Shown in pieces: positions 25,349 through 53,775 of a stretch of 64,000 nt of DNA. The notes under the pieces were generated by a model. It was given only the letters and a program-made list of their open reading frames with translations, was not told where the DNA came from and made no database searches. Both the position numbers and the translations under genes were made by a program. Position 1 is the first letter of the stretch, and every line of letters starts with the position of its first letter. The stretch spans positions 186,001 through 250,000 of IMG/VR virus record IMGVR_UViG_3300009093_000034; one strand, given 5' to 3'.

Positions 25349-25407
25349 AGATATGTTCTCCTTAAGTGTTCAATATCCAATTAGTTATTTCGTATATTAA
25401 GGTAAGA

Positions 25408-29239: not shown

Positions 29240-30019
29240 ATGGAAGATCCAAAATTCATCCCATGCAGAAAATGTGTCTCAAAGCGTGGCCCGAAACCAG
29301 GTTACTTCTACTCCCAAGTTCAATGGGAGGGGAAGAGTTACATAGTTGCGGAAGAGTGCGATTGCCACAAAGAGTACATGAAGACCAGAACCTTCTATCA
29401 CAAAGCTGTGATAGCTGGAATCTACCCTCAGTCCTTTGACTATGATCTAGACAGAGAGTATCAAGGAAAAAAGTCTCTTGTAAACGTAAGCAAACTCAAG
29501 AAGTATGCCTTAGGTTTCTCAGACCAATTTCCTGATGCCATGGTTTACATCTATGGACCAAACGGAACTCAAAAAACAACCTTAGCTCATTGGGTTGGTG
29601 CTCAAGTCATCTCACAAGGAAAGTCGGTCAAGTTCATCTTGATGCAGAACCTTCTTTCACTTTTATCTCGAGACCCTTTCAAAAAGGATGAAGAGACTAG
29701 TGATGAATTGGAAGCTTTGAACAGGACAGACTTGATCATAGTTGACGAGGCCTTTAGTAGTGACAAGGTGACTCTATATAAGTCAGGCTATCAAATTCCT
29801 TTCTTAGACGAGTTCATTAGAGGTCGAATTGAAGGTCAAAGAAAAGGGATCTTGTTCATAAGTAATACGAACCCTGACCAACTTGAACCTCAAGGGTTCT
29901 CTCGGTCTATTCAAGATCTGGTGTCTCGTAACACCATAGCTAAGGGAACAGCTTTGGAGTTTGTGGATAATTACATCCAAGAGAAGAGTAACTTCCCAGT
30001 TAAAGGGCTATTCGATTGA
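29240..30019 (+). CDS. DnaC/IstB-like AAA+ helicase loader
   Basis: N-terminal CxxC...CxC, GPNGTQKTTL Walker A, LIIVDE, FISN; adjacent to helicase. Confidence 0.85.
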   Translation: MEDPKFIPCRKCVSKRGPKPGYFYSQVQWEGKSYIVAEECDCHKEYMKTRTFYHKAVIAGIYPQSFDYDLDREYQGKKSLVNVSKLKKYALGFSDQFPDAMVYIYGPNGTQKTTLAHWVGAQVISQGKSVKFILMQNLLSLLSRDPFKKDEETSDELEALNRTDLIIVDEAFSSDKVTLYKSGYQIPFLDEFIRGRIEGQRKGILFISNTNPDQLEPQGFSRSIQDLVSRNTIAKGTALEFVDNYIQEKSNFPVKGLFD

Positions 30020-36432: not shown

Positions 36433-37527
36433 ATGGCTGACATTAAAAGAAAACTTGCCACCATCCGGACCATCAAGTCCGTTGAACCCATTGAAGGCGC
36501 TGACTCCATTGTCAAACTGACCTTCGAGAGCATGAACTGGGTCTGCGTCACCAACAAAGACTCCAACCCTGTTCCTGGCCAACGCCGAGTGTACTTTGAG
36601 ATCGATTCGGTTTTGCCGGATCTTCCGATCTTCGAGTTCATGAAGCCCTACCGCTTCCGCGTCAAGACCATCAAGCTCCGAGGTCAAGTCTCTCAGGGCC
36701 TCTCAATTCCTCTTGAAGAAATCTTCGATTCTTTTAAGGACGAATACTTCGGAGCCATTTCTGACTATGCTAATGAGGGTGATGACCTCACCGATCTGAT
36801 CGGAGTGGTTAAGTATGAGATCCCTGAAGACGTGAACATCGGTGGAGATACCAAGGGATCTTTCCCTGGTTTCATCACCAAGACTGACGAAGAGCGTGCT
36901 CAGAACATCGACCATATCGAAGATGTTCTTGCTACTCAGGATCTTTCAACCTCGGTCAAGGTCGACGGTTCTTCTGCTACTTTCTACCTCTACGAAGGTG
37001 AGTTCGGTGTTTGTTCCAGAAACCTGGAGCTCAAGGACACCGAGACCAATACTCTTTGGAAGCTTGCTCGTAAGTACAAGCTCAAGGAGAGGATGGAAGC
37101 CTTTGCTCTTGGGACTCCTCAGGCAACCGAAGAACTTCAGAACTTTGCTCTTCAAGGCGAGGTAGCAGGACCTGGCATCCAGAACAACCGAGCAAAACTT
37201 CTCGAGGTCGGTCTCTACATCTTCACAGCTCAGGACATCGACAACACTTCTCGTCTTGATCCTGAAGAACTGAACAGGTTGATTGACCTTCTGAACCAGT
37301 ATGAACCTGATGCTCCGAAGATCATGAAGGTACCTTTCCTTGGAGTTTATCCTGCTGGAACCTTCAAGACCATCAAGGATCTTGAGGACTTCTCTAAGGG
37401 TCCTACTGCTTTGGACGGAACTTCTGACAAGAACGTTCAGAGAGAAGGTGTGGTTTTCCGTAGTGTTGATGGGAACATCTCGTTCAAGTACATCAACCCT
37501 CAGTACCTGCTCAAACACGATCTATAA
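36433..37527 (+). CDS. RNA ligase, Rnl2/DRB0094 family
   Basis: N-terminal RKLATIRTI...YFEIDS OB domain; KTDEER, KVDGSS, LQGEVAG, REGVV, FKYIN motifs. Confidence 0.93.
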   Translation: MADIKRKLATIRTIKSVEPIEGADSIVKLTFESMNWVCVTNKDSNPVPGQRRVYFEIDSVLPDLPIFEFMKPYRFRVKTIKLRGQVSQGLSIPLEEIFDSFKDEYFGAISDYANEGDDLTDLIGVVKYEIPEDVNIGGDTKGSFPGFITKTDEERAQNIDHIEDVLATQDLSTSVKVDGSSATFYLYEGEFGVCSRNLELKDTETNTLWKLARKYKLKERMEAFALGTPQATEELQNFALQGEVAGPGIQNNRAKLLEVGLYIFTAQDIDNTSRLDPEELNRLIDLLNQYEPDAPKIMKVPFLGVYPAGTFKTIKDLEDFSKGPTALDGTSDKNVQREGVVFRSVDGNISFKYINPQYLLKHDL

Positions 37528-41688: not shown

Positions 41689-42381
41689 ATGACCAGTTCC
41701 CAGTTCTTGACTGAGATTAAGGCTTACGCTAAAGAAGCGAACAACCTCTATTTCGACGGAGAATTGGACTTGAACAAGATTCACTTCGTGGTCTCCACGA
41801 GGATGTTCAGGACTCTGGGACTTGCTAACCATCGCTTCAACAAGCGCCTCAATCGTGTGGTTTACTCCATTAAGATGGCGAGTCTGTTGTCTGGAACCGA
41901 CACCCACAACTGGCACAACGTTCTGGTCCATGAGATGGTTCACATCTGGCAGTACATGAATGGTTATTTCGACCATCACGGAAACTCCTTCTTGATGAAG
42001 GCTGCTCAGATTGGCCGAATTGATCCTGACATGCACATCGAGAGACTTTGTCATCTGAATGACCACAAGAACAGGTCGGTCTTGGCCAAGGTTCTTGCTG
42101 TGAAGGCTGCTCGTTCTTCTGCTGCTACTAAGAAGACCCAGTACCTGGTTTCCAAGAATGGCAAGTTCTTCTTCATCACCTGTATCAAGGTGAAGGGAAT
42201 TGCTACTCTTCAGAAGAAAGGATACTCTGTTTTCAGGCTCAAGAAGCAGATCACCAGGGTTCAGAACACCAGAAACCTGGAGAAACTCCTTGAAGAACGT
42301 CGGTACTACAGCAAAGAGATTCTTCTTAAGAACTTTCCTGAACTTCCGAGCTTGATGGTCAAGCTCAACCCCACAAAGTAA
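41689..42381 (+). CDS. SprT-like zinc metalloprotease
   Basis: N..YFDGEL, VLVHEMVH, HHG..F motifs. Confidence 0.85.
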   Translation: MTSSQFLTEIKAYAKEANNLYFDGELDLNKIHFVVSTRMFRTLGLANHRFNKRLNRVVYSIKMASLLSGTDTHNWHNVLVHEMVHIWQYMNGYFDHHGNSFLMKAAQIGRIDPDMHIERLCHLNDHKNRSVLAKVLAVKAARSSAATKKTQYLVSKNGKFFFITCIKVKGIATLQKKGYSVFRLKKQITRVQNTRNLEKLLEERRYYSKEILLKNFPELPSLMVKLNPTK

Positions 42382-42387
42382 GATTTG

Positions 42388-42419
42388 AAGGACCGCACTA
42401 AGCGGTCCTTTTTCTTTTT
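42388..42419 (+). terminator. Rho-independent terminator
   Basis: AAGGACCGC-ACTAA-GCGGTCCTT then T-run. Confidence 0.85.
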
Positions 42420-42431
42420 ATACTACTGCTC

Positions 42432-43418
42432 ATGGCAGTAACAATCATCATTGAAGGCCCGAATCTATCGGGAAAGAGTACCTTATCCAAGGCTCTGTCA
42501 GAACGACTTGGAATTCCAGTCGTCCACAACTCTAAGCCTGAAGACGGCTTCAGAGACAATCTCAAGTTCTCCATGGAGAACAAAGAGAACATCATTCTAG
42601 ATCGACACCACCTCGGAGAAGTCGTTTACCCTGCATTGAAGAGGGACGGACGACAGCCCCTTGAGCTATGGGAACAACATATGATCGAGAGAGTTCTTGA
42701 ATCCAAGGGAACGATCTTGATTCTTTGTAGTGCAGACCTTCAGTTTCGACTACAAAAGTTCGATGAGAGAGGTGAAGACTTTGTCACCAAGAATGAGCTT
42801 AAAGATGAAGGAGATCTCTTCGAAGATGCCTTCAATCGAAGCCTTCTCTCCAACAAGTTTGACTATCGTCTTCCTTTTACCGATGAAGATAAGACTGAAC
42901 GATTTCTTGATTTTATAGAAGAAAGATACAACTATCTTCTTGAAATCTCTGAAGAGTTTGAAGAGTATGAACACCAAGGTTATCTTCCTTCAGATCCTTA
43001 CTCTGAGCCCACGGCAGTTATTATCGGAGATAGCTATGGTGACAAAACATCTGTTGGATCTGGAACAAAGAGAGCTTTTGTATCTCCTATTGGATCAAGC
43101 AGACACCTTGCTCAAGCTCTAGCTATGATTCATCGTCCAACAGATAAACTTTACATCACCAATGCTTGGAAGTACATTGATAACAGAGAAGTAAGTCGTC
43201 AAACTCTTGTTGAAGAACTTTATTTTGTTGGAGCTTCCAAATGTCCTATTATTGTTCTTGGTTATGAAGCCAAGAAAGCTTTGGATGGAATCAATACAGA
43301 TGGTCTCTTTTCCCATTATACTTTTGTAAACCATCCTCAGTTTGAGTTTAGGTTCAAGAACAAAGAGATCGGGAGATACGCTAAGGCTCTCGACATTGCA
43401 TTGGGAGTCAACAGGTGA
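42432..43418 (+). CDS. dNMP kinase fused to a uracil-DNA-glycosylase-like domain
   Basis: IEGPNLSGKST, ILDRHH.GE.VY; C-terminal IIGD...YITNA...IVLG..A...NHPQ UDG-superfamily pattern. Confidence 0.75.
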   Translation: MAVTIIIEGPNLSGKSTLSKALSERLGIPVVHNSKPEDGFRDNLKFSMENKENIILDRHHLGEVVYPALKRDGRQPLELWEQHMIERVLESKGTILILCSADLQFRLQKFDERGEDFVTKNELKDEGDLFEDAFNRSLLSNKFDYRLPFTDEDKTERFLDFIEERYNYLLEISEEFEEYEHQGYLPSDPYSEPTAVIIGDSYGDKTSVGSGTKRAFVSPIGSSRHLAQALAMIHRPTDKLYITNAWKYIDNREVSRQTLVEELYFVGASKCPIIVLGYEAKKALDGINTDGLFSHYTFVNHPQFEFRFKNKEIGRYAKALDIALGVNR

Positions 43419-44713
43419 GTCAACAAAACAACAACGGAGTAGCCCAGTCTTTATTCATGGCTCTCAAGTATCTATACGATGAAGGAAAGTTTGTTCCGGA
43501 TAAGACAGGAGTCAAGACTGTTGAGATCGTCAACGGAAGTATCTCTCTAGATCCGCAGTTTCCTTACTTAGACCTGGGAATTTTCAAGGCCAAGGAAGAA
43601 TACATCAAAAAAGAACTTGAGTGGTATCTCTCTCAAAAGTTAAACATCCATCCTATAATGGATGATGTAAAGATTTGGAATGAAGTCTGTGGTAGAAATG
43701 GAGAGATCAACTCCAACTATGGTTGGGCAGTTTTTAGTCCAGAAAACTGGGATCAATTTGGGTATGTTCTCAGTTGCTTAAAGAAAGATAAGTGGTCTCG
43801 TAGAGCTGTTATGCAATACAACAGACCTGTCATGGTAGTAGACTATAACAGAGATGGAATGTCTGATTATCTTTGTACTCTTTCTGTTCAAGTGTTGATC
43901 AGAGATAGCAAACTTTACTACATCGTCACTCAACGATCTTGTGATTTTAGAACAGGTCTTCCTAACGACTTTGCTTGGCACGCTTGGGTTTACAAGTCTC
44001 TTTTCAACTTGTTGAAAGAGGAGTATCCAGATCTTGAATATTCAGAAGATGGTATCCAAATGAACTTTGGGTCTGTTCATCTCTACGAGAGAAATTTTGG
44101 ACTCTTCCAAAAGTGGGAAGAATATCTTCAAGAACAGTCTAAGATCGAACAAGATAAGTTAACAAACTCGATAGCCATTGTTCCTAGAAAAAAGTGGTAT
44201 CCCGCTATGTACTTCACAAAGGTACGAGACGTTCAAAGTCCATTGAGAGCCCATGATACCGATGCGGGTATGGACTTCTATGTTCCTAAATTCTCCGATG
44301 ATTTCATCAGAGACTTTGAAGTAAAGAATCCCAAGATCAAAGTGATCGACAAGATCAACATTGAACTTAAGCCTCATGAAAGAGTCTTGATCCCAAGTGG
44401 AATCAAGGCACACGTTCCTGAGAACCACATGCTCATGACCGAGAACAAATCTGGTGTCGCTTCTAAGCTAGGACTTGACGTTATGGCTAAGATCGTTGAC
44501 GAACCTTACAATGGAGAGATACATCTTTCATTGGCCAACACTTCCAACGAAACCGTACTGATTACAGAAGGACAGAAGTTGGTTCAGTTGATCGCTGTTC
44601 CGGTTTCTTATGTTGTCCCTACAGAGATCACAAACGAAGAGTACCAAAGCCTTCCTCGATGGCAAGAAACTTCCAGAGGTGAAGGTGGGTTTGGCTCAAC
44701 AGGAACAAAGTAA
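43415..44713 (+). CDS. dCMP hydroxymethylase-like (T4 gp42/thymidylate synthase family) fused to trimeric dUTPase
   Basis: GEINSNYGW, RRAVMQYNRP, DGMSDYLCT, QRSCD...GLPND (Asp at the specificity site), GSVHLYER; C-terminal AGMDF, NKSG, VDEPYNGEI, RGEGGFGSTG. Confidence 0.85.
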   Translation: MSQQNNNGVAQSLFMALKYLYDEGKFVPDKTGVKTVEIVNGSISLDPQFPYLDLGIFKAKEEYIKKELEWYLSQKLNIHPIMDDVKIWNEVCGRNGEINSNYGWAVFSPENWDQFGYVLSCLKKDKWSRRAVMQYNRPVMVVDYNRDGMSDYLCTLSVQVLIRDSKLYYIVTQRSCDFRTGLPNDFAWHAWVYKSLFNLLKEEYPDLEYSEDGIQMNFGSVHLYERNFGLFQKWEEYLQEQSKIEQDKLTNSIAIVPRKKWYPAMYFTKVRDVQSPLRAHDTDAGMDFYVPKFSDDFIRDFEVKNPKIKVIDKINIELKPHERVLIPSGIKAHVPENHMLMTENKSGVASKLGLDVMAKIVDEPYNGEIHLSLANTSNETVLITEGQKLVQLIAVPVSYVVPTEITNEEYQSLPRWQETSRGEGGFGSTGTK

Positions 44714-45102
44714 TGGTATTGACACTGCCTCATGGCGAGTTAACCTATGGATGGAAAACACCTAGAGAGCTTAGACTAGAAGAAGATGATGAAAACTATC
44801 TTCCTCCAGGAATTGAGAAAATCCTTGAGTTAGATGAGTTGTTAGTTGATGACGCGTTTAGAAATAAAGGAATAGGAGGTCTACTTGTAAAGTGGTTTTT
44901 TGCTACTCCTGAAGCAGAAGAAGCTGATGCCTTCTTTCTCGATGTCTCTCCTTCTTATCTAGAAGATGAAGGACTAACGGAAGCTGAAGCTGAGCTTTAC
45001 TTGAGACACTTTTACTCTAAGTTTGGTTTTAAGTCTAAGACTCCACACTCAAGAATGTGGGTCTTTAAGAAACCTCTTCCTATTGAGGACTATCCTTTAT
45101 GA
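44713..45102 (+). CDS. GNAT acetyltransferase
   Basis: LLVDDAFRNKGIGGLL and L..FYSKFGF motifs. Confidence 0.85.
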   Translation: MVLTLPHGELTYGWKTPRELRLEEDDENYLPPGIEKILELDELLVDDAFRNKGIGGLLVKWFFATPEAEEADAFFLDVSPSYLEDEGLTEAEAELYLRHFYSKFGFKSKTPHSRMWVFKKPLPIEDYPL

Positions 45103-45560
45103 GCGAGTTTCTAAATGACCTCTTCTTCATGAAGTGGGCAGAAGACGTTTCAGAAGCTTCCACATGTGCCAAGATCAAGGTCGGGTCTGTCATCACCAAG
45201 AACAAAAGAGTCGTTTCTCTTGGTTACAATGGCGTCCCTTCTGGAGTCGACCATTGTTGTAATCACTTCTCTGGAGATCTTTCTAGAGAAGTCTTAGGGG
45301 AAGATGAGTTCTTGAAACTCCACTCTGAGTTCTCAAATAACTTTGAACTTCATGCTGAGTCTAACGCCATCATTGATGCCTTGAACAGACAACAAGATCT
45401 TACAGGTACCACGTTATACTGTACTTACTCTCCTTGTTCTCACTGTAGCAAGTTGATCATTCAAACAGGGATCAAGAGAGTTGTCTTCAAAAAGTTCTAC
45501 TCAGTCGAGCCTGTTCAATGGCTTAGCCAATTCATATCTGTAACTCACCTTCCAGACTAA
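45099..45560 (+). CDS. dCMP deaminase
   Basis: STC...VG.VI, GYNG.P.G, HAESNAI, SPCSHCSKLI. Confidence 0.93.
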   Translation: MSEFLNDLFFMKWAEDVSEASTCAKIKVGSVITKNKRVVSLGYNGVPSGVDHCCNHFSGDLSREVLGEDEFLKLHSEFSNNFELHAESNAIIDALNRQQDLTGTTLYCTYSPCSHCSKLIIQTGIKRVVFKKFYSVEPVQWLSQFISVTHLPD

Positions 45561-45568
45561 GGATCTTC

Positions 45569-46738
45569 ATGACCACCACAAAGTACTATGACGAGTTTCT
45601 TCGCTATCACGCTATGGCCAAGAAACAGCAAGAGCTGTGCAACCTTGGAACTACTCCCTACTCCCAATCAGGAGTGAACGATGATCTCATGGAGAACGTG
45701 TTTCTCTATGACGTCGTAGAGAGAAAGTACGCAGGGTTCTCGGCTATCATCAACGATTGTTTTTATGGATCAAGTCCAGAACATCCTTACTTTCAGAAGA
45801 TGCAGTTTATTCCTCCTTCACATGATAGAGTTAGAACGATCTTTCTCTGGGACGACGCCAGAAAGAAACTCAGCACTCAAGCTTGGTTCTATGTTTTTCT
45901 TGTTCATCGTTTGACAGGAAGTGGCATCAACTACGCTAAGAATCCTTCAGGCTATCACAACACCATCCTTCCTGCTTTGTCTCAGGCCACGACAATTCCT
46001 GACATGACCGACATCATCAGAGGCTACAAGGGAGGACCTTTCTACACCTCTGTCGGATATCAGTTTCCATCGTTCCCTAAGCCTCTTGGAATTCAAGCTC
46101 GAGCTCTTTATAAGAGAGGTGGAGATTATTTCCTTTGTGAGTACCTACCAGAGTTGGTCCAAAAAGTTTACGAGTATCTCGAGAAAGCCCATTGGTCTGG
46201 AAAGAAGGTTACCTTTAGAGAACTTGGAACTCTCATGTTCGATTGGAACAAGTCAAAAGGTCTCAAAGCCTTCAAGTTCCAATACTCAGCTTTCTTAGCT
46301 GACATCGCAGACTGGTTCCCTGAGTTCATGGATAGAGAATCTCCTTTCTACTATGGAAGCAACGCAGTCCAGTGTCTCTCTTATCTTGTTCAAGGTGGAA
46401 GTAAGTCTGAGACTGTCTTTGACAAGTTGATGGAGAAGATCTACCAAGACACAGGCTCAGTTCCTTACAACGCAGAGGACGTTTGTTGTGACTTCATCAG
46501 ATACGTTGAGAACTATATCCGTCCAGGTGCTGATTACGGACATCTAGATATGGATAAAATTTGGTCTAGTTCAAAGATCTTGGATCATCCTTTTGGCCGA
46601 CAAAAGGCCATGTTGGATCTAAGGCTTGTTCAATCATTTAACAATCTCTCCTTCCACCCAACTGGAGATACTATTCTCTCAAACAGTGGTTTCTCTGTTG
46701 ACCAATACAGAGAAGCAATCAAGAAAGGACACTTCTAA
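45569..46738 (+). CDS. aGPT-pyrophosphorylase-superfamily HhH-fold DNA-modification protein (clade uncertain)
   Basis: FQY...ADI....F....S..YYGSNA..CL and EDVCCDFIRY resemble the 5-hmdU DNA kinase helical / amino acid:DNA transferase families; cluster context. Confidence 0.55.
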   Translation: MTTTKYYDEFLRYHAMAKKQQELCNLGTTPYSQSGVNDDLMENVFLYDVVERKYAGFSAIINDCFYGSSPEHPYFQKMQFIPPSHDRVRTIFLWDDARKKLSTQAWFYVFLVHRLTGSGINYAKNPSGYHNTILPALSQATTIPDMTDIIRGYKGGPFYTSVGYQFPSFPKPLGIQARALYKRGGDYFLCEYLPELVQKVYEYLEKAHWSGKKVTFRELGTLMFDWNKSKGLKAFKFQYSAFLADIADWFPEFMDRESPFYYGSNAVQCLSYLVQGGSKSETVFDKLMEKIYQDTGSVPYNAEDVCCDFIRYVENYIRPGADYGHLDMDKIWSSSKILDHPFGRQKAMLDLRLVQSFNNLSFHPTGDTILSNSGFSVDQYREAIKKGHF

Positions 46739-47625
46739 TGTCACATGACACTCACGTAGTAGACGGCATCAATAAAGATGCTTTTTATCTAGATGATGAG
46801 AAGACACTTGTCAAAGCCCAAGAAACCATAGATTACTACAAAGAACTTGCTAAGGGTTGGAAGACTTATCTCCCAGATCCTGTTGTCATGACCCATGACA
46901 ACGTGAGAGTAGTTAGAGATGACTTCATCATCGGAACTAAGGCTAGAGCTGCTGACTTGGTCCTTTCTAGGATTCAAGAGGAAGAAGTGGTTTATTGTCA
47001 ACCTCGAGTTGGTTTGGCTGGAGTCTCTGTCATTGAAGCATCTAAGATTCATGGAAAAAGGGTAACTCTGTTCATGCCTTCTTCTAAGAAGATCTCCTAC
47101 CACCAAGCTTGTACCATTGAGCGTGGAGCAAACCCAATCTTCAAGAGAATCGCTGCCATGCCCAACTTGAATAGAGAAGCAGATATTTACGCCAAAGAAA
47201 ATGGAGCTTACTTCATTCCTCTCGGACTAAAGCATCCTCTTGCTACAGCTGCCATCATGCTTACCGCTCTCCAAATTCCAGAACCTGAAGAGGTCTATGT
47301 TGCAACCTCCACAGGAGTTTTAACCAGAGCTCTTCAGATCGCTTGGCCAAACGCCAAGTTCATCAGCGTAGCTGTAGCTAGAAACATGAAAGCTGGAGAA
47401 CTTGGTCGAGCTCAAGTTATCTCAGAAGCTTTGGACTTCCAGACCCCTGAGAAGAAAGAGAATCTTCCTCCGTTTCCTTCTGTGTCGACCTACGATGCCA
47501 AAGTTTGGAAGTACATTCCAAAAGACGGAAAGGTTGACAGACTCTTTTGGAACGTAGGCCAAGAACCCATCTTGTTTGACCAAACAATTATTGATAGAAC
47601 TTTATCTTACCGAGACTGGAAGTAA
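46738..47625 (+). CDS. PLP-dependent enzyme, fold type II
   Basis: VRDD..IGTKAR (PLP lysine), VATSTGVL, STYDAK, LFWNVG; same class as hypermodification decarboxylases. Confidence 0.75.
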   Translation: MSHDTHVVDGINKDAFYLDDEKTLVKAQETIDYYKELAKGWKTYLPDPVVMTHDNVRVVRDDFIIGTKARAADLVLSRIQEEEVVYCQPRVGLAGVSVIEASKIHGKRVTLFMPSSKKISYHQACTIERGANPIFKRIAAMPNLNREADIYAKENGAYFIPLGLKHPLATAAIMLTALQIPEPEEVYVATSTGVLTRALQIAWPNAKFISVAVARNMKAGELGRAQVISEALDFQTPEKKENLPPFPSVSTYDAKVWKYIPKDGKVDRLFWNVGQEPILFDQTIIDRTLSYRDWK

Positions 47626-47643
47626 GATATTAAAGGAACGAAT

Positions 47644-48687
47644 ATGTCATCACTTTTACTAACACCATTTGCCCCAATGTCCAACAGGATTGGATCTCAC
47701 CGAGCTGCTCAAGGCATGATCTATGCCGATCAGATTCGACGTCTAGTTGATAGAGATCTTGAGATCGAAACTTCTGAAGAGATGAAGGATCTGTCTCAGT
47801 ATGACAAGATCTATGTCTATCACGGAAACGATTGGGGTGGAACCTTGAACCTCTTTGGAGGACTCAAGGAGTACACGGCTACTGACAGGTTTGAGAGACT
47901 TACCCACTACAAGGGAATTGTCTACTCTCTTCAGATCCCTTTCCCTGACTACGCCGGGATGATCAAGGACAGATTAGACAAAGCAACTGCCAAGGGCGAC
48001 AAGGTCCAGGATGGTTGGTTGTCTGCCGACTACGACAACCTTCGTAAGATCCAGACAACCTCGGTTGTGTTGGACATGAAGTTCTTTGAGACCACAGATA
48101 ACTTGGTCATTGGAGACAGCCACGCTATCTCCTTGTATCGTCCTGGTTGGAACGTGAACTCTGTTCCCTTCAAGACTCTTCATGGGGCTCTTGATCTAGG
48201 ACTCAAGAGCTTTTGTGCCCCAGAATCGAGTAAGTATCTTGTCCTAGACGATCTTGACATCTACTTCGGAAACATCGATATCCGTCACCATCTTCTTAGG
48301 CAACCAAATCCTGAAGAAGCCACGAGGAGTTTAGTAGCTCAGTACTTTGAGCAAGCCAATGAACTTCCTGTTCGTCAGGCCAACATTTACGAACCTCTTC
48401 CTATCAACCCTGATTCTAGAAAGGTCCCTCAGACTGGCTGGTACAAAGGTACCCCATTTTTTGGAACGTGGGAAGAGAGAAACAAGATCAGAGACATCTT
48501 CATCGAAGAAGCTAAGGCTCAGACCATCAAGTATGGCCCTAAGGTTCAGTTGAAGAAATGGGCTTCTTACCTTCAGAACGAGAAGGGAGAGCTTGATGAG
48601 AAGTTCATGGAAGTTCCACAATCGGTCCACCTTTCAAGAGCAGCTTATCCTTACTGGCAAATTCCTGTAGATCTTCCTCCTTTCTAA
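47644..48687 (+). CDS. SGNH/GDSL-fold protein
   Basis: IGDSH, FGNID, SVHL blocks. Confidence 0.55.
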   Translation: MSSLLLTPFAPMSNRIGSHRAAQGMIYADQIRRLVDRDLEIETSEEMKDLSQYDKIYVYHGNDWGGTLNLFGGLKEYTATDRFERLTHYKGIVYSLQIPFPDYAGMIKDRLDKATAKGDKVQDGWLSADYDNLRKIQTTSVVLDMKFFETTDNLVIGDSHAISLYRPGWNVNSVPFKTLHGALDLGLKSFCAPESSKYLVLDDLDIYFGNIDIRHHLLRQPNPEEATRSLVAQYFEQANELPVRQANIYEPLPINPDSRKVPQTGWYKGTPFFGTWEERNKIRDIFIEEAKAQTIKYGPKVQLKKWASYLQNEKGELDEKFMEVPQSVHLSRAAYPYWQIPVDLPPF

Positions 48688-48712: not shown

Positions 48713-48721
48713 TGAGATATT
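48713..48721 (+). promoter_or_regulatory. TGAGATATT promoter motif
   Basis: Followed by AAGGAGG SD and ATG 48750. Confidence 0.7.
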
Positions 48722-48749
48722 GTACCAGCCCAAAGGAGGTTGGCACAGT

Positions 48750-49265
48750 ATGACGGCTCAATGGATTCTTCTAACAGCTCTCATGCATGGCCAACCTTCA
48801 CTCCCTCAAGTGGCCATGGTTCAGTACAGTTACGAACCGATGGTTTACTTGATCGCTGATGCTTTTCTGGTTCCCAGAGACATCGCGATGAGCGTGGGTT
48901 ACAACGAGAGCACCTTCCGTCCTTGGAAGATCACTAAGAGTGGAAAGGACCATAAAGGTCGTTCCCGTGGTCTTTACCAGATCGACAAGAGCAACGAAAA
49001 AGAACTTGTTGAAAAGTCTGGTCTGAACCATAAGTTTCGTTGGAACAACGCTTACGATTCGGCCTATGTCGGGATCGCTTACTTATCCAGACTTCACAAG
49101 CAGTTTGGAAACTGGATCTTGGCTGTCGCTGCTTACAACGCGGGACCCGGCGCCATCACTAAAGCTCTCAAGACTGGAAAGCGCTGGCCCAAAGAAACTC
49201 AGGTCTACGTAAAGAGAATCTTCGGTGATGATCTTGCTCTTGCCTTTCTGAGATATTATAGTTGA
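48750..49265 (+). CDS. Lytic transglycosylase (SLT domain)
   Basis: NES, GLYQI, YLSRL..FG.W.LAVAAYNAG, ETQ.YV motifs; hydrophobic N-terminus. Confidence 0.9.
   Translation: MTAQWILLTALMHGQPSLPQVAMVQYSYEPMVYLIADAFLVPRDIAMSVGYNESTFRPWKITKSGKDHKGRSRGLYQIDKSNEKELVEKSGLNHKFRWNNAYDSAYVGIAYLSRLHKQFGNWILAVAAYNAGPGAITKALKTGKRWPKETQVYVKRIFGDDLALAFLRYYS
49249..49257 (+). promoter_or_regulatory. TGAGATATT promoter motif
   Basis: Followed by GAGGAG SD and ATG 49276. Confidence 0.65.
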
Positions 49266-50831: not shown

Positions 50832-51905
50832 GTGGATAAGGAATTCACACTAGCAGTTTTTATCTGCCGGGCTCAGCCTTTTCATAAGGCTCATTACGCT
50901 GCTCTTCTCCATGCAGCAAAATATGCTACTCGTTTACTCATCCTAGTAGGAAGTGCAACTAGTGGTCGTAGCACAAGAAATTCTTGGACATATGAAGAAC
51001 GCGTTCGCTTCATTAAAGAATACATCATGTCTAAGGATGAGAGACTCGATTACTCTCACAAGATCGAAATCCGCCCTATCGCAGATAGTGCCTATGATTT
51101 CCATGATTGGCTATTCAGAGCCAAGAAAATCATCCAAGAAACCCAATTCGTAGATCTCCCTCAGGGACAACACAAGATAGCCATCATCCGTCACTACAAA
51201 GACGACACGAGCTACTATCTCAACTACTTCCCAGAATACCAGACCATAGAAACTCCCACGTACGATGATGGGTTTGGAGCTACACAGATCCGTGAAGCTT
51301 ACTTTAGCATAGAGTATGGCGTTGACGGATTTATGTCAAGAATAGCTCTTGAAAAAGAATATCCTTATCTTAAGACGTGGCGAGAAGCCAACAAAGAAAT
51401 TTTCCTCCAACTTCAGCGAGAGTTCGCCTTTGTCAAGGCTTACAAGAAGAGCTGGGAAGGAACTCCCTATCCTGTCAACTTCAGTACCTGCGATGCAGTC
51501 TGTGTCTGCTTGGGTCATGTTCTCTTGATCAAGAGAGGAAGGAATCCTGGAAAAGACCAGCTAGCTTTGCCTGGTGGTTTTTTGAACTTGGATGAGACCT
51601 TTCAGCAAGGCGCTATTCGTGAGCTCCGTGAAGAAACTCACATTGGCCTTTCTGTTCAAACTCTAGAAACTACCATCGCCAATCAACACATCTTCGACCA
51701 TCCTCTTCGTGATCCTCGTGGTCGTTTCATCACCAATGCTTTTCTCTTTGACCTTAAGAAAGAAAAGAGTCTTCCTGAGATAAAAGCAGACGATGATGCT
51801 TCGGAAGCCCTTTGGCTTCCTCTTCAGGATCTTGAGAAGAGAGAAAATGAATTTTTCGCTGACCACGCTCAGATCATCAAGTGGTTCAGGAACAGGATGC
51901 GCTAA
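50832..51905 (+). CDS. Bifunctional NMN/NaMN adenylyltransferase - Nudix ADP-ribose pyrophosphatase (NadM-Nudix)
   Basis: RAQPFHKAH, VGSA, GATQIR; Nudix box GGF...ET....A.RELREET, RDPRGR, ADDDA. Confidence 0.93.
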   Translation: MDKEFTLAVFICRAQPFHKAHYAALLHAAKYATRLLILVGSATSGRSTRNSWTYEERVRFIKEYIMSKDERLDYSHKIEIRPIADSAYDFHDWLFRAKKIIQETQFVDLPQGQHKIAIIRHYKDDTSYYLNYFPEYQTIETPTYDDGFGATQIREAYFSIEYGVDGFMSRIALEKEYPYLKTWREANKEIFLQLQREFAFVKAYKKSWEGTPYPVNFSTCDAVCVCLGHVLLIKRGRNPGKDQLALPGGFLNLDETFQQGAIRELREETHIGLSVQTLETTIANQHIFDHPLRDPRGRFITNAFLFDLKKEKSLPEIKADDDASEALWLPLQDLEKRENEFFADHAQIIKWFRNRMR

Positions 51906-52210: not shown

Positions 52211-53014
52211 ATGATTCGCACAGCACTCGTAATCATCGATCCTCAGAACGACTTCGTTTTGACCGATCAAGATGGTGCTGCTCTTCCTGTTCCAGGAGCT
52301 AAGGCAGACATGGACCGCCTCAGCGACTTTATCAGGAAGAACATCACCAAGTTCAATGAGATTCAGGTCACCCTGGACTCTCACCACCAGTTCCAGATCT
52401 TCCATCCTATGTATTGGACGGATGGAAAGGGTAAGCAGCCGAAGCCTTTCGATAGGATCACGGCCGACGACATTGAGAAGGGAGTTTGGACCACCAAGGT
52501 TCCTTCCCACCGTCAGAGAGCTCTTGAGTACGTCAAGGCTCTGGAGACCGGAGGACGTTATGTCCTCATCATCTGGCCTTACCACTGTCTGATCGGCAGT
52601 TGGGGCGGACAGATCTACGAGCCTCTCTTCAAGACCCTTCTTGATTGGGAGACCACCAACATCGGTATGTTCGGAAAGGTGACCAAGGGTTCCAATCTGT
52701 TCACCGAGCACTACTCGGCTGTCAAGGCTGAAGTTCCGGATCCTCAGGATCCCACAACTCAGTTGAACCAGGACTTCATCGACATTCTGGCAAACCCGGA
52801 CATCGATCAGGTTCTCGTCGCTGGTGAAGCTTTGGACTTCTGTCTTTACAACTCGGCTCTCGACGTGGCCAACGCCCTTGGTGTTGATCAGGCCAAGAAG
52901 ATCAAGGTTCTTGAGGACTGCACAAGTCCCATCTACCCTGATGCTGTGGCTCGTGTCAAGGCAGATCTCGGAGCCAAGGGTGTTCAGTTCATCACCACGG
53001 CTACCGCGTTCTAA
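52211..53014 (+). CDS. pncA: Nicotinamidase (isochorismatase family)
   Basis: IIDPQNDF, LPVPGA, TLDSH, WPYHC, KG, GEALDFC. Confidence 0.9.
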   Translation: MIRTALVIIDPQNDFVLTDQDGAALPVPGAKADMDRLSDFIRKNITKFNEIQVTLDSHHQFQIFHPMYWTDGKGKQPKPFDRITADDIEKGVWTTKVPSHRQRALEYVKALETGGRYVLIIWPYHCLIGSWGGQIYEPLFKTLLDWETTNIGMFGKVTKGSNLFTEHYSAVKAEVPDPQDPTTQLNQDFIDILANPDIDQVLVAGEALDFCLYNSALDVANALGVDQAKKIKVLEDCTSPIYPDAVARVKADLGAKGVQFITTATAF

Positions 53015-53028
53015 AAGGAAGGTTCAAC

Positions 53029-53775
53029 ATGCCTATTTTCAACACTGTTGACGATACTGTCAACGCAAAGATCGGCGGCTCGAACTTCGGATTCTCTCAC
53101 ATCAAGGTGGAGCGTCTGAAGGCCAACGAGTACACCTTGGTCACCATTGCCATTGACATCTCGGGTTCGATCTCTGGGTATCAGTCCCAGTTGGCTCAGA
53201 TGCTCAACACGATTGTCGACGCTTGCCGACCTCCGAAGAACCCTCGAGGAGACAATCTGCTGCTTCGCGTGATCGTGTTCAACGACTACGTCAAGGAAGT
53301 TCACGGCTTCTTGCCTGTGACTTCCATCCAGCAGTACGACGACTCCGATCTTCACACCGGAGGCGGAACAGCTCTCATCGACTCTTTGTACTCGGCCATC
53401 GCCAGTACCAAGACCTACGGTGAAGACCTGGTTGACCAGGACTACGACGTCAACGCCGTTACCTTCGTTGCTACCGACGGACAGGACAATGCTTCGAGCT
53501 ACACCTTGGCTAAGGTCAAGGCTGAACTTGAGGCTGTTGCTACCGAAGAAAAGCTCGACAGCTACCAGACGGTTTTGATTGGTCTTGGTTCCAACCTTGA
53601 TCACTACTTGACCAGAGTGAAGGATGATGGAGGACTGTCTCAGGTGGTTCTCCTTGGAGACGTCACGACTGGAAAGCTTGGAAAGCTTGCTGGTTTCATC
53701 AGCAAGTCCATCTCGAGTTCGTCACAGAGCCTCGGCACTGGAGCTCCTGCCCCGGCTGCTTCGATGGTGTTCTAA
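53029..53775 (+). CDS. vWA domain protein (TerY-like)
   Basis: DISGS MIDAS, GGTAL.D, TDGQDNAS; ISKSISSSSQS C-terminus. Confidence 0.85.
   Translation: MPIFNTVDDTVNAKIGGSNFGFSHIKVERLKANEYTLVTIAIDISGSISGYQSQLAQMLNTIVDACRPPKNPRGDNLLLRVIVFNDYVKEVHGFLPVTSIQQYDDSDLHTGGGTALIDSLYSAIASTKTYGEDLVDQDYDVNAVTFVATDGQDNASSYTLAKVKAELEAVATEEKLDSYQTVLIGLGSNLDHYLTRVKDDGGLSQVVLLGDVTTGKLGKLAGFISKSISSSSQSLGTGAPAPAASMVF

What the first reader, a model, noticed from the sequence alone, without database searches (positions are those of the whole stretch)
42432..48687. Hybrid DNA-modification cluster: cytosine-type hydroxymethylase with thymidine-hypermodification-type enzymes, GNAT and SGNH proteins - candidate new modified base
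Seen: seven tightly packed co-oriented genes (dNMP kinase-UDG, TS-family-dUTPase, GNAT, dCMP deaminase, HhH protein, PLP enzyme, SGNH protein). The TS-family enzyme reads RSCDFRTGLPND with Asp (codon 43967-43969) where thymidylate synthase has Asn (RSCDVFLGLPFN). It also shares GEINSNYGW and DGMSD.(L/M)CT with T4 gp42. Known: Asp at this site specifies dCMP in T4 dCMP hydroxymethylase. aGPT-Pplase-type HhH proteins plus fold-II PLP enzymes build amino-acid-derived adducts on 5-hmdU in ViI- and M6-type phages, and an acetyltransferase finishes the base in PaMx11. Inference: either (a) 5-hmC is activated, given an amino acid, decarboxylated and acetylated, producing a hypermodified cytosine, or (b) the dCMP deaminase converts hmdCMP to hmdUMP as an alternative route to hypermodified T. 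I do not recognise either as a described pathway.
Basis: partly seen in the sequence, partly recalled or inferred. Interest (0 to 1): 0.9.

Follow-up and report, generated by a model that had tools for sequence, protein, structure and literature searches.

The report
Phage pathway for hypermodified cytosine
A 306-kb uncultured phage carries a packed gene set that should put 5-hydroxymethylcytosine into its DNA and then attach an amino-acid-derived group to it. That chemistry has so far been shown only for thymine, and the core genes are common in uncultured aquatic phages.

Summary
g2 is a T4 gp42-type dCMP hydroxymethylase (45% identity) with all three diagnostic Asp residues, fused to a complete trimeric dUTPase domain. 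g6 belongs to the same PHROG as M6 gp52, the PLP decarboxylase of DNA-bound amino-acid adducts. g7 has an SGNH fold. g3 is a GNAT and g4 a dCMP deaminase.

g5 is a confident all-alpha protein of a large unnamed family. It matches no Pfam aGPT-Pplase model and no solved structure. Its only structural relatives outside its own family are proteins named amino acid:DNA transferase or HhH glycosylase-like.

The core (hydroxymethylase, g5, g6, g7) recurs in uncultured T4-like and jumbo phages, and g7 and g5 are fused in seven lineages. No 5-hmdU-DNA-kinase homologue is present.

Best reading (about 0.55): 5-hmC is made before replication, then modified on DNA by amino-acid transfer (g5), decarboxylation (g6) and acetylation (g3). 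g7 either activates the hydroxymethyl group or trims the product. The deaminase-to-hmU route is not supported. This is a new variant of a known kind, and the product is unknown.

The parts
42387..42411 (+). Terminator-like hairpin (10-bp stem, T run) between the SprT-like gene and g1. Likely upstream boundary of the transcription unit.
42432..43418 (+). g1, 328 aa. N-terminal P-loop (d)NMP kinase of the phage 'thymidylate kinase' type. Proposed to phosphorylate hm-dCMP. The C-terminal domain is weakly UDG-superfamily-like.
   Evidence: phrog_761 at 9e-13. PDB YorR 2axp at 1.3e-5. Pfam UDG at only E 0.088. The same two-domain architecture occurs in Stenotrophomonas phage AXL3 and Actinomycetia phage DSL-LC01, where it is annotated 'thymidylate kinase'. 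No specific similarity to 5-HMUDK.
43415..44713 (+). g2, 432 aa. T4 gp42-type dCMP hydroxymethylase (residues about 1-240) fused to a trimeric dUTPase-family domain (residues about 270-432). Catalytic Cys154 (43874-43876). Asp151 at the ThyA L143 position (43865-43867). Asp177 at the ThyA D169 position (43943-43945). Asp185 at the ThyA N177 position (43967-43969).
   Evidence: Diagnostic rules are taken from PMC13326640.
44713..45102 (+). g3, 129 aa. Small GNAT acetyltransferase with the R-x-x-G-x-G acetyl-CoA motif at residues 50-55. Proposed to N-acetylate the final amine. Not conserved in related clusters.
   Evidence: Pfam Acetyltransf_7 at 27.9 bits against cut-off 27. Absent from 79 related loci. 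No specific similarity to PaMx11 gp48.
45099..45560 (+). g4, 153 aa. dCMP deaminase with HAE and PCxxC zinc motifs. Supplies dUMP.
   Evidence: Pfam 9.8e-25 and phrog_174 at 3.6e-45. Motifs read.
45569..46738 (+). g5, 389 aa. All-alpha protein of a large unnamed viral family. Proposed amino-acid:DNA transferase-like enzyme acting on 5-hmC. Near-invariant E303-D304-x-x-C307-D308 (Cys codon 46487-46489), plus H113-R114-x-T116-G117-S118, D245 and G263.
   Evidence: AF2 pLDDT 95.1. BFVD Foldseek hits. No PDB fold match. No Pfam, PHROG or NCBIfam hit. Conservation. 959 and 142 homologue clusters. 556 IMG/VR stretches.
46738..47625 (+). g6, 295 aa. Fold-type-II PLP enzyme of phrog_7093, the family of M6 gp52. 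PLP lysine is K68 (46939-46941). Proposed decarboxylase of the DNA-bound amino-acid adduct.
   Evidence: phrog_7093 at 7e-34 for g6 and 2e-159 for M6 gp52. BLASTP to M6 gp52 at 6e-6. Aligned Lys and the C-terminal PFP..YD.K.W / FWN.G motifs.
47644..48687 (+). g7, 347 aa. N-terminal alpha/beta domain (about 1-140) plus an SGNH/GDSL-fold domain (about 150-340). Invariant GDSH at 157-160 (Ser159 codon 48118-48120) and GNID at 209-212. Proposed to O-acylate (activate) the hydroxymethyl group or to de-esterify an intermediate. The 47644 start is preferred over the database's 323-aa call, because the invariant S18 and H19 lie upstream of that call.
   Evidence: AF2 pLDDT 88.8. Foldseek against PDB: PAF acetylhydrolases, esterases and PatB, E 3e-6 to 1e-3. 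Invariant columns. phrog_13881 at 7.5e-51. Fusions with g5.

Best explanation
This is a DNA base-hypermodification cluster aimed at cytosine. It has a pre-replicative and a post-replicative part.

Pre-replicative part, by homology to phage T4. The g2 N-domain converts dCMP to 5-hydroxymethyl-dCMP. The g1 kinase domain takes it to the diphosphate, and host NDP kinase to the triphosphate. The dUTPase-family domain of g2 and the dCMP deaminase g4 shape the pyrimidine pools: dUTP, and possibly dCTP, goes to the monophosphate, and dCMP goes to dUMP for thymidylate. The phage polymerase then puts 5-hmC into DNA.

Post-replicative part, inferred by analogy with the ViI, M6 and PaMx11 thymidine pathways. 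g5 binds the flipped 5-hmC. Its single conserved Cys307, with E303/D304 one helical turn before it, attacks C6 to generate an exocyclic C5 methylene, and an amino acid adds to that methylene. g6 removes the carboxylate of the DNA-bound adduct using PLP. In this phage, the GNAT g3 acetylates the resulting amine.

g7, an SGNH-fold enzyme fused to g5 in seven lineages, takes the partner position held by the 5-hmdU DNA kinase in the thymidine systems. It most likely turns the hydroxyl into a better leaving group by O-acylation. Alternatively it trims an ester after transfer.

Shown here: the gene identities, the active-site signatures, the conserved linkage and the fusions. Inferred: the DNA-level substrate, the order of steps, the amino acid used, the role of g7 and the final structure.
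For: - **g2 is a 5hm-dCMP synthase.** It is 45% identical to T4 gp42. PDB 1b49 scores E 1.4e-50, against about 1e-11 for thymidylate synthases. It has Asp at the ThyA N177 and L143 positions and keeps Asp at D169, which is Asn in 5-hydroxy-dCMP synthases.
- **The same signature holds in relatives.** All 15 TS homologues checked next to g5 relatives carry it.
- **g6 is in the family of a characterised enzyme.** It shares phrog_7093 with M6 gp52 and has the PLP lysine and family motifs. The same domain is fused to ParB plus a DNA methyltransferase in Erythrobacter phage R6L gp1, which points to a DNA substrate.
- **g5 looks like an amino acid:DNA transferase by structure.** The model is confident. 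Outside its own family, its top Foldseek hits are proteins named amino acid:DNA transferase (prob 1.0), a PhiW-14 protein named for the 5-hmdU DNA kinase helical domain (0.97) and endonuclease III (0.33). A 53%-identical homologue carries the UniProt name 'Amino acid:DNA transferase domain-containing protein'.
- **g5 has a plausible active site.** A single Cys is conserved in 49 of 50 sequences, within E-D-x-x-C. PaMx11 gp46 has E243-T244-x-x-C247 with the same spacing (PMC11472151).
- **Gene order matches M6.** g5 followed directly by the PLP gene mirrors M6 gp51-gp52.
- **Linkage is conserved.** Hydroxymethylase-g5-(335-aa gene)-g6-g7 lies among T4-like replication genes. In IMG/VR, g6 is near g5 in 34 of 79 loci, g7 in 33 and the hydroxymethylase in 26. 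The hydroxymethylase is directly upstream in every g5-g6-g7 locus that has upstream sequence.
- **g7 and g5 are fused.** Seven g7-g5 fusion representatives were found.
- **g7 has the SGNH fold** with an invariant Ser in GDSH.
Against: - g5 and 50 homologues hit no Pfam aGPT-Pplase model.
- Profile-profile comparison with the PF18724 family gives a probability of only 2-8%. Its weak best local alignment does not place C307 on the known catalytic Cys.
- Foldseek finds no solved structure, although PaMx11 gp46 has been crystallised.
- No homologue of the 5-hmdU DNA kinase, the one enzyme shared by all thymidine pathways, is in the window or in about 95 related loci.
- About 45 of 79 g5 relatives sit in another context, without g6, g7 or a nearby hydroxymethylase: HhH-GPD glycosylase, g5, a 162-aa gene and a 331-aa gene. 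So g7 and g6 are not universal partners.
- GNAT and g1 are not conserved in relatives.
- Nothing here shows that the substrate is DNA rather than a mononucleotide.
- No chemistry has been measured.
Confidence: 0.55

Rival explanations
1. The hydroxymethyl base that is decorated is 5-hmU, not 5-hmC. The dCMP deaminase g4 would deaminate hm-dCMP to hm-dUMP, and g5-g7 would then build a thymidine-type hypermodification.
For: A dCMP deaminase lies inside the cluster, and also in L009, L012, L031 and a few other loci. All characterised amino acid:DNA transferases and phrog_7093 decarboxylases act on 5-hmdU derivatives (PMC8989533).
Against: - The deaminase is near g5 in only 10 of 79 related loci, against 26 for the hydroxymethylase. 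Many complete hydroxymethylase-g5-g6-g7 clusters lack it.
- Phages that make hmU use a dUMP hydroxymethylase with Asn at the specificity site. Here every neighbouring enzyme has the dCMP-type Asp.
- T4 has gp42 and a dCMP deaminase together without making hmU (general knowledge).
- g5 belongs to a family distinct from the thymine-specific clade-2 enzymes.
Confidence: 0.07
2. The tailoring enzymes act before replication on hm-dCMP or hm-dCTP, or on another small molecule. A fully modified nucleotide is then polymerised, or the product is not a DNA base at all.
For: No DNA-level kinase is present. g5 has no proven DNA-binding motif. The cluster is dominated by mononucleotide enzymes: g1, g2 and g4. 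Fold-II PLP and SGNH enzymes usually act on small molecules.
Against: - The nearest characterised relatives of g6 act on DNA (PMC8989533), and the domain is fused to ParB plus a DNA methyltransferase.
- The structural neighbours of g5 are DNA-glycosylase-like proteins.
- In one clade g5 is paired with an HhH-GPD glycosylase homologue.
- The clusters sit among replication genes.
Confidence: 0.13
3. The phage DNA contains plain 5-hmC, or 5-hmC with some other known decoration. g5, g6 and g7 are unrelated neighbours, for example a repair-type helical protein, an amino-acid-metabolism PLP enzyme and an esterase. The apparent pathway is an accident of gene packing.
For: - No HMM connects g5 to any known family.
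- Most g5 relatives lack g6 and g7 nearby.
- Phage early regions are densely packed with unrelated genes.
Against: - The hydroxymethylase is directly upstream of g5 in every g5-g6-g7 locus with enough sequence, across T4-like and jumbo phages whose g5 proteins are only about 55% identical.
- Seven independent g7-g5 fusions exist.
- g6 shares a family with a proven DNA-adduct decarboxylase.
- Translational coupling: overlaps of 1-4 nt.
Confidence: 0.15
4. A reverse-polarity route. g6 acts as a beta-replacement enzyme, like O-acetylserine sulfhydrylase. The 5-hydroxymethyl oxygen of hmC attacks a PLP-bound aminoacrylate. g5 only presents the flipped base, and g7 handles the acetyl ester.
For: The closest solved sequences to g6 are cysteine synthases (E 0.015). 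SGNH enzymes typically handle acetyl esters. No kinase is needed in this scheme.
Against: The cysteine-synthase similarity is marginal. g6 is far closer to M6 gp52, a decarboxylase. g5 has its own conserved Cys/Glu/Asp constellation, which suggests catalysis.
Confidence: 0.05

Closest known systems
Thymidine hypermodification pathways of phages ViI, M6, PaMx11 and PhiW-14: 5-hmdU DNA kinase, clade-2 aGPT-Pplase (amino acid:DNA transferase), PLP decarboxylase, and in PaMx11 an acetyltransferase. Sources: PMC5889632, PMC8989533, PMC11472151.
   Same: - A TS-family hydroxymethylase supplies a 5-hydroxymethylpyrimidine.
- A helical, glycosylase-like protein is followed directly by a phrog_7093 PLP enzyme, the same gene order as M6 gp51-gp52.
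- An acetyltransferase is present, as in PaMx11.
- The putative transferase has a conserved Cys one helical turn after a Glu.
   Different: - The base is cytosine (dCMP-type hydroxymethylase).
- g5 is not a Pfam PF18724 member, and profile comparison is not significant.
- There is no 5-HMUDK.
- An SGNH-fold protein, absent from all described thymidine clusters, is the fused or adjacent partner.
- There is no radical-SAM or FAD enzyme.
Phage T4 5-hydroxymethylcytosine pathway: gp42 dCMP hydroxymethylase, gp1 dNMP kinase, gp56 dCTPase/dUTPase, cd dCMP deaminase, alpha- and beta-glucosyltransferases.
   Same: g2 is 45% identical to gp42 and has the same active-site signature. A dNMP kinase, a dNTP pyrophosphatase function and a dCMP deaminase accompany it. 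Many carriers of the core are T4-like phages.
   Different: The hydroxymethylase is fused to a trimeric dUTPase-type domain. No glucosyltransferase is seen. The tailoring genes are of the amino-acid type, not the sugar type.
5-carbamoyloxymethylcytosine made by a 5-hmC carbamoyltransferase in environmental phages (MetaGPA, PMC8670742).
   Same: A non-sugar decoration of 5-hmC, found in uncultured phages.
   Different: It needs a single carbamoyltransferase. None of g5, g6 or g7 is related to it.
Metavirome C5-methyltransferase/TET clusters that carry a P-loop kinase and an aG/PT-PPlase (PMC8256090).
   Same: Those authors already speculated that 5-hmC could be phosphorylated and further modified by thymidine-type enzymes.
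   Different: There, 5-hmC is made after replication by a methyltransferase plus TET, and the partners are the canonical kinase and aG/PT-PPlase. No product was shown. Here 5-hmC is made before replication and the partners are different families.
5-hydroxycytosine arabinosylation in RB69 and DLP3 (PMC13326640).
   Same: The pathway starts from a gp42-like TS homologue with the dCMP-type Asp.
   Different: Those enzymes carry Asn at the ThyA D169 position and make 5-hydroxy-dCMP. g2 and all 15 neighbours of g5 relatives that were checked keep Asp.

Membership tests
T4-type dCMP hydroxymethylase (5hm-dCMP synthase) | Full-length homology to gp42, closer than to thymidylate synthase | tested here: met
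   PDB 1b49 at E 1.4e-50 against about 1e-11 for TS. 45% identity to T4-type gene 42.
T4-type dCMP hydroxymethylase (5hm-dCMP synthase) | Catalytic Cys, with Asp at the ThyA N177 position (dCMP specificity) | tested here: met
   Cys154 and Asp185, aligned with T4 gp42 and E. coli ThyA.
T4-type dCMP hydroxymethylase (5hm-dCMP synthase) | Acidic residue at the ThyA L143 position (hydroxymethyl rather than methyl product) | tested here: met
   Asp151 in DGMSDYLCT. Rule from PMC13326640.
T4-type dCMP hydroxymethylase (5hm-dCMP synthase) | Asp kept at the ThyA D169 position (Asn marks 5-hydroxy-dCMP synthases) | tested here: met
   Asp177 in QRSCD. Rule from PMC13326640.
T4-type dCMP hydroxymethylase (5hm-dCMP synthase) | Enzymatic conversion of dCMP to hm-dCMP | not testable with these tools
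   Needs an enzyme assay or expression followed by LC-MS.
Amino acid:DNA transferase, aGPT-Pplase clade 2 (Pfam PF18724) | Match to the family HMM or profile | tested here: not met
   No Pfam hit for g5 at E up to 10, nor for 50 homologues at E up to 0.01. True members all carry PF18724. hhalign probability 2-8%.
Amino acid:DNA transferase, aGPT-Pplase clade 2 (Pfam PF18724) | All-alpha, HhH-glycosylase-like fold | tested here: inconclusive
   The model is all-alpha with pLDDT 95. BFVD hits to proteins named AADT (prob 1.0, TM 0.43-0.50), to a protein named for the HMUDK helical domain (0.97) and to EndoIII (0.33). No PDB hit at all.
Amino acid:DNA transferase, aGPT-Pplase clade 2 (Pfam PF18724) | Conserved catalytic Cys with a Glu one helical turn upstream (E243/T244/C247 in PaMx11 gp46) | tested here: inconclusive
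   g5 has E303-D304-x-x-C307, conserved in 49 of 50 sequences, with the same spacing. The two motifs are not aligned by profile comparison.
Amino acid:DNA transferase, aGPT-Pplase clade 2 (Pfam PF18724) | Co-occurrence with a 5-hm-base DNA kinase (5-HMUDK) | tested here: not met
   tblastn with the M6 gp54, PaMx11 gp49 and PhiW-14 gp37 kinases finds nothing in the window or in about 95 related loci.
Amino acid:DNA transferase, aGPT-Pplase clade 2 (Pfam PF18724) | Transfer of an amino acid to a 5-(activated)methylpyrimidine in DNA | not testable with these tools
   Needs in vitro reconstitution.
phrog_7093 PLP-dependent DNA-adduct decarboxylase (M6 gp52 type) | Match to the family profile over its full length | tested here: met
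   g6 at 7e-34 covering profile positions 9-279 of 279. M6 gp52 at 2e-159.
phrog_7093 PLP-dependent DNA-adduct decarboxylase (M6 gp52 type) | PLP-binding lysine and family C-terminal motifs | tested here: met
   K68 aligns with the M6 gp52 Lys. PFP..YD.K.W and FWN.G are shared.
phrog_7093 PLP-dependent DNA-adduct decarboxylase (M6 gp52 type) | Decarboxylation of a DNA-bound amino acid | not testable with these tools
   Biochemistry is required.
SGNH/GDSL hydrolase superfamily | SGNH alpha/beta fold | tested here: met
   Foldseek against PDB: 2hsj, 1bwq, 3mil, 4s1p and PatB, prob 1.0, E 3e-6 to 5e-3, over about 200 residues.
SGNH/GDSL hydrolase superfamily | Block I GDS (Ser nucleophile) and block III GxND | tested here: met
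   Invariant G157-D158-S159-H160 and G209-N210-I211-D212 in 42 sequences.
SGNH/GDSL hydrolase superfamily | Block V DxxH (Asp and His of the triad) | tested here: inconclusive
   H329 and E323 are invariant, but the spacing is not DxxH.
GNAT acetyltransferase | Pfam match above the curated cut-off, and the acetyl-CoA motif | tested here: met
   Acetyltransf_7 at 27.9 bits against 27. R50-x-x-G53-x-G55 read.
Trimeric dUTPase | Five conserved motifs | tested here: met
   Pfam 1.7e-14 and TIGR00576 at 4.6e-25. Motifs at residues 283, 344, 359, 388 and 421. The nucleotide preference (dUTP or dCTP) was not tested.
Uracil-DNA glycosylase superfamily (C-terminal half of g1) | Family HMM match and motifs A and B | tested here: inconclusive
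   Pfam UDG at E 0.088. An HPQ where family 4 has HPS. A stand-alone UDG-like gene (E 0.0014, with HPSP) sits directly upstream of g5 in L009.

The most novel reading that the evidence does not exclude
A kinase-independent route to a new hypermodified cytosine. An SGNH-fold enzyme (g7) O-acylates 5-hmC in duplex DNA. A previously unnamed transferase family (g5, with Cys307 as nucleophile) replaces the ester with an amino acid. A fold-II PLP enzyme decarboxylates the adduct, and in this phage a GNAT acetylates the amine. The product would be, for example, an acetamido-alkyl or acetamido-alkoxy-methyl cytosine. The core of this route would be widespread in abundant uncultured aquatic T4-like and jumbo phages.
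Probability: 0.3. Interest if true: 0.88.

Novelty: new variant of a known kind. Interest (0 to 1): 0.78.

Why it matters
Amino-acid-derived hypermodification is documented only for thymidine. Known 5-hmC and 5-hydroxycytosine decorations are sugars or a carbamoyl group. A cytosine branch would add a new natural DNA base. It would also add a new transferase family, and possibly a new way of activating a hydroxymethyl group on DNA (an ester instead of a phosphate).

The core genes occur in at least 556 IMG/VR stretches and roughly a thousand 90%-identity protein clusters. Many of these are in T4-like phages from lakes and seas. Such a base could therefore be common in environmental viral DNA. 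It would affect restriction and CRISPR sensitivity, sequencing and bisulfite or enzymatic-conversion artefacts, and metavirome recovery.

The enzymes would also be candidate tools for site-selective derivatisation of 5-hmC.

Tried and rejected
- **Close cultured relatives.** Megablast of the cluster and tblastn of g5 against GenBank phages gave no match. No cultured phage carries g5.
- **HMM searches for g5.** Pfam, PHROGs and NCBIfam gave nothing for g5. Pfam also gave nothing for 50 family members or for seven fusion proteins.
- **PDB by sequence.** A single-sequence search and a profile search both found nothing.
- **Profile-profile comparison.** hhalign of the g5 family against PaMx11 gp46/M6 gp51 relatives was not significant, even after adding PhiW-14, Rhodoferax, Rhizobium and Acinetobacter phage members.
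- **Other g5 comparisons.** The g5 family against the C-terminal half of Aeromonas phage 44RR ORF233c, and against the HhH-GPD neighbour, showed no relation.
- **g1 and g3 against PaMx11.** g1 against the PaMx11 5-HMUDK shares only the P-loop. g3 against the PaMx11 acetyltransferase shows only generic GNAT similarity.
- **The 335-aa partner gene.** No Pfam, PHROG or PDB hit.
- **IMG/VR search with g1.** It found only the source contig.
- **GTDB genomes.** Eight hits, all aquatic MAG contigs and no isolates.
- **Source names.** They were uninformative. JGI's 'ApaH/PP2A phosphatase' label on g7 homologues is not supported by the fold.
- **Literature.** Searches for amino-acid or aminoalkyl adducts of cytosine found nothing.
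- **5-hydroxy-dCMP synthase.** I considered this identity for g2 and rejected it on the D169 rule.

Full report
**Observation**

The window holds seven + strand ORFs between 42432 and 48687. Gaps or overlaps between them are -4, -1, -4, +8, -1 and +18 nt. A 10-bp-stem terminator-like hairpin at 42387-42411 precedes them. No comparably strong terminator-like hairpin lies on the + strand inside the block.

The source contig is IMGVR_UViG_3300009093_000034. It is 305,833 bp long, so this is a jumbo phage. Only 4 of the 20 other large ORFs tested in the window match a PHROG. The cluster has no nucleotide-level relative among GenBank phages.

**g2, the hydroxymethylase**

- The N-terminal 240 residues match T4 dCMP hydroxymethylase (PDB 1b49) at E 1.4e-50. 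Thymidylate synthases score about 1e-11.
- The best phage matches are T4-type gene 42 at 45% identity.
- A 2026 paper (PMC13326640) shows that gp42-like enzymes split into 5hm-dCMP and 5-hydroxy-dCMP synthases. It gives three diagnostic positions in E. coli ThyA numbering:
  - N177D marks dCMP as substrate.
  - L143D/E marks a non-methyl product.
  - D169N marks the 5-hydroxy product.
- Aligned with ThyA and T4 gp42, g2 has Asp at all three positions. It is therefore predicted to make hm-dCMP, not dTMP, hmdUMP or 5-hydroxy-dCMP.
- The C-terminal 160 residues are a trimeric dUTPase-family domain with all five motifs. Whether it prefers dUTP or dCTP cannot be told from sequence.

**g1, g3 and g4**

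- **g1.** The N-terminal half is a phage 'thymidylate kinase'-type P-loop (d)NMP kinase. The two-domain architecture recurs in phages AXL3 and DSL-LC01. The UDG-like call for the C-terminal half is weak (E 0.088). A stand-alone UDG-superfamily gene does sit directly upstream of g5 in a related T4-like contig. g1 shows nothing beyond the P-loop in common with the 5-hmdU DNA kinases.
- **g3.** A minimal GNAT that just passes the Pfam cut-off.
- **g4.** An ordinary dCMP deaminase.

**g6, the PLP enzyme**

g6 matches phrog_7093 at 7e-34 over the whole profile. M6 gp52 is the PLP-dependent decarboxylase that acts on a DNA-bound amino-acid adduct (PMC8989533). It is a full-length member of the same PHROG at 2e-159.

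g6 and M6 gp52 align directly at E 6e-6. They share the PLP lysine (K68 in g6) and two family-specific C-terminal motifs.

The same domain is embedded in a ParB plus DNA-methyltransferase protein in Erythrobacter phage R6L. In Microcystis phage Mae-JY30 it sits next to two ParB genes. Both cases argue for a DNA substrate.

**g5, the crux**

No HMM library recognises g5 or 50 of its relatives. Genuine clade-2 amino acid:DNA transferases all carry PF18724. Profile-profile comparison with that family stays at 2-8% probability, even after divergent members are added. By sequence, g5 is therefore not a member of the described family.

The AF2 model is very confident (pLDDT 95.1, pTM 0.93) and entirely helical. 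It matches no solved structure.

Against predicted viral structures, beyond its own family the best matches are:
- a protein named 'Amino acid:DNA transferase domain-containing' (prob 1.0, TM 0.43-0.50);
- a PhiW-14 protein named for the 5-hmdU-DNA-kinase helical domain (prob 0.97);
- an endonuclease III (prob 0.33);
- a mycobacteriophage amino acid:DNA transferase (prob 0.30).

A 53%-identical homologue also carries the transferase name in UniProt. That is a source's label, and I could not reproduce it with the Pfam copy at hand.

The family has one conserved cysteine, C307, present in 49 of 50 sequences. It lies in the near-invariant string E303-D304-x-x-C307-D308 on one helix. PaMx11 gp46 uses E243-T244-x-x-C247, where Cys attacks C6 and Glu and Thr hold the metal at O4 (PMC11472151). 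The spacing is the same. The change of Thr to Asp would suit a 4-amino group, but this correspondence is an inference and is not an alignment result.

**g7, the SGNH protein**

The model (pLDDT 88.8) has an N-terminal alpha/beta domain and a C-terminal domain. The C-terminal domain matches SGNH/GDSL enzymes: PAF acetylhydrolases, esterases and the peptidoglycan O-acetyltransferase PatB (E 3e-6 to 5e-3, prob 1.0). GDSH (Ser159) and GNID are invariant in 42 sequences.

**Comparative evidence**

- g5 has 959 relatives (90%-identity clusters) at E up to 0.001, and 142 representatives at the 50% level.
- 556 IMG/VR stretches encode a g5 relative.
- In GTDB genomes there are only eight hits, all aquatic MAG contigs.
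- In uncultured T4-like phages the order is hydroxymethylase, (deaminase or a UDG-like gene), g5, (a 335-aa unknown), g6, g7. This block is set among gp43, gp44/62, gp45, uvsX, gp41 and gp46/47.
- Among the 79 other IMG/VR loci, g6 is near g5 in 34, g7 in 33, the hydroxymethylase in 26 and the deaminase in 10. g1 and g3 are near g5 in none.
- Every g5-g6-g7 locus with upstream sequence has the hydroxymethylase directly upstream. All 15 such enzymes checked carry the T4 signature.
- Seven representatives, mutually below 50% identity, are g7-g5 fusion proteins.
- About 45 of the 79 loci show a different context: an HhH-GPD glycosylase homologue, g5, a 162-aa gene and a 331-aa gene. The 331-aa gene is homologous to the 335-aa gene above.
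- No homologue of the 5-hmdU DNA kinase, PaMx11 gp46, the radical-SAM isomerase, the FAD lyase or the PaMx11 acetyltransferase occurs in the window or in about 95 related loci.

**Interpretation**

The pre-replicative half is a T4-like 5-hmC pathway. That part is well supported.

The conserved core of hydroxymethylase, g5, g6 and g7 is best read as a post-replicative tailoring pathway on 5-hmC, analogous to thymidine hypermodification. Three observations carry this reading:
- g6 belongs to the DNA-adduct decarboxylase family;
- the structural neighbours of g5 are transferase-like or glycosylase-like proteins;
- the g5-g6 gene order is the same as M6 gp51-gp52.

In this scheme g5 installs an amino acid, g6 decarboxylates it, and here g3 acetylates the amine.

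The missing kinase is the main gap. The fused SGNH protein is the obvious candidate for activation by esterification, since SGNH enzymes form acyl-Ser intermediates and some are O-acetyltransferases. It could equally be a late esterase. The g5-only clade shows that g5 can work without g6 or g7.

I put the overall reading at about 0.55 and the ester-activation version at about 0.3. The deaminase-to-hmU route is disfavoured, because the deaminase is dispensable in relatives and T4 has the same pair of enzymes.

**Novelty**

The searchable literature contains no amino-acid-type adduct on cytosine. The nearest idea is a speculation that TET-made 5-hmC might be phosphorylated and processed by the canonical kinase and aG/PT-PPlase (PMC8256090). 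Known decorations of 5-hmC or 5-hydroxycytosine are glucose, arabinose and other sugars, and carbamoyl (PMC8670742, PMC13326640).

I class this as a new variant of a known kind. It has the same logic as thymidine hypermodification, but a different base, a different transferase family, no kinase and an added SGNH enzyme. The product is unknown until nucleosides are measured.

Noticed in passing
window 50832-51905 and 52211-53014: An NMN-adenylyltransferase-like (CTP_transf_like) plus NUDIX fusion, matching phrog_395 at 5e-61. It is followed by a protein with an isochorismatase/nicotinamidase-type domain. Together they look like a phage NAD+ salvage pair just downstream of the cluster.
   Followed up: partly
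window 41689-42381 and 48720-49265: The cluster is flanked by a SprT-like metalloprotease-domain protein (Pfam 2e-12) and an SLT lytic transglycosylase (2.7e-17). Neither is conserved next to g5 elsewhere.
   Followed up: partly
L014:9207-9983 and neighbours; also L026, L069 and about 45 IMG/VR loci: More than half of the sampled g5 relatives sit in a different conserved block: an HhH-GPD glycosylase homologue (Pfam 1.4e-8), g5, a 162-aa unknown and a 331-aa unknown. No PLP, SGNH or hydroxymethylase gene lies within reach. This may be a second, simpler modification system using the same transferase-like protein.
   Followed up: partly
L007:11133-12140 (335 aa); homologue at L014:11640-12635: A recurrent unknown protein lies directly after g5 in many T4-like clusters and in the g5-only clade. 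It has no Pfam, PHROG or PDB match and is absent from the window. It could be an alternative activating enzyme.
   Followed up: partly
L001:6001-8388 (Aeromonas phage 44RR2.8t ORF233c; also phages 31, Aes012, phiAS4 and IME13): Cultured T4-like Aeromonas phages encode a 795-aa protein whose N-terminal 340 residues are homologous to g7 (31% identity, E about 1e-38). Its C-terminal 450 residues are unrelated in sequence to g5. It sits next to a sodium:solute symporter-like gene. It may be a testable cultured handle on g7 function.
   Followed up: partly
L002:4792-7212 (Erythrobacter phage R6L gp1) and L003:5995-6705 (Microcystis phage Mae-JY30): The phrog_7093 PLP domain is inserted in a ParB plus DNA-methyltransferase polyprotein in R6L. 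In Mae-JY30 it stands alone next to two ParB/sulfiredoxin genes, where it is annotated 'DNA modification methylase'. This suggests further PLP-dependent DNA modifications that have not been described.
   Followed up: partly
L007:8974-9357, L009:8189-8548 and L009:9636-10004: Related T4-like clusters carry a weak DUF1599 ('nucleotide modification associated domain 1') gene just upstream of the hydroxymethylase. One carries a stand-alone UDG-superfamily gene with an HPSP motif directly upstream of g5. This echoes the UDG-like half of g1.
   Followed up: no
L025 (IMGVR_UViG_3300043446_001970): A rearranged cluster in the order g7-like, g6-like, a dUTPase domain, dCMP deaminase, g5. The dUTPase and deaminase functions therefore travel with the module in at least one other lineage.
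   Followed up: no
window 47644-47715: The public gene call for g7 is 323 aa (P0262) and starts at Met25. The invariant S18 and H19 lie upstream of it, so the 347-aa ORF starting at 47644 is the better model.
   Followed up: yes
window 25366-27450, 30016-31458 and 36433-37527: SbcC-like nuclease subunit, DnaB-like helicase and RNA ligase genes. They were the only four PHROG-recognisable proteins (with a VWA-like one at 53029-53775) among the 20 other large ORFs tested in the window, which shows how divergent this jumbo phage is.
   Followed up: no
g7 homologue cluster P0359: JGI names several g7 homologues 'diadenosine tetraphosphatase ApaH/PP2A family phosphatase'. The predicted fold is SGNH, so the label looks wrong.
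   Followed up: partly
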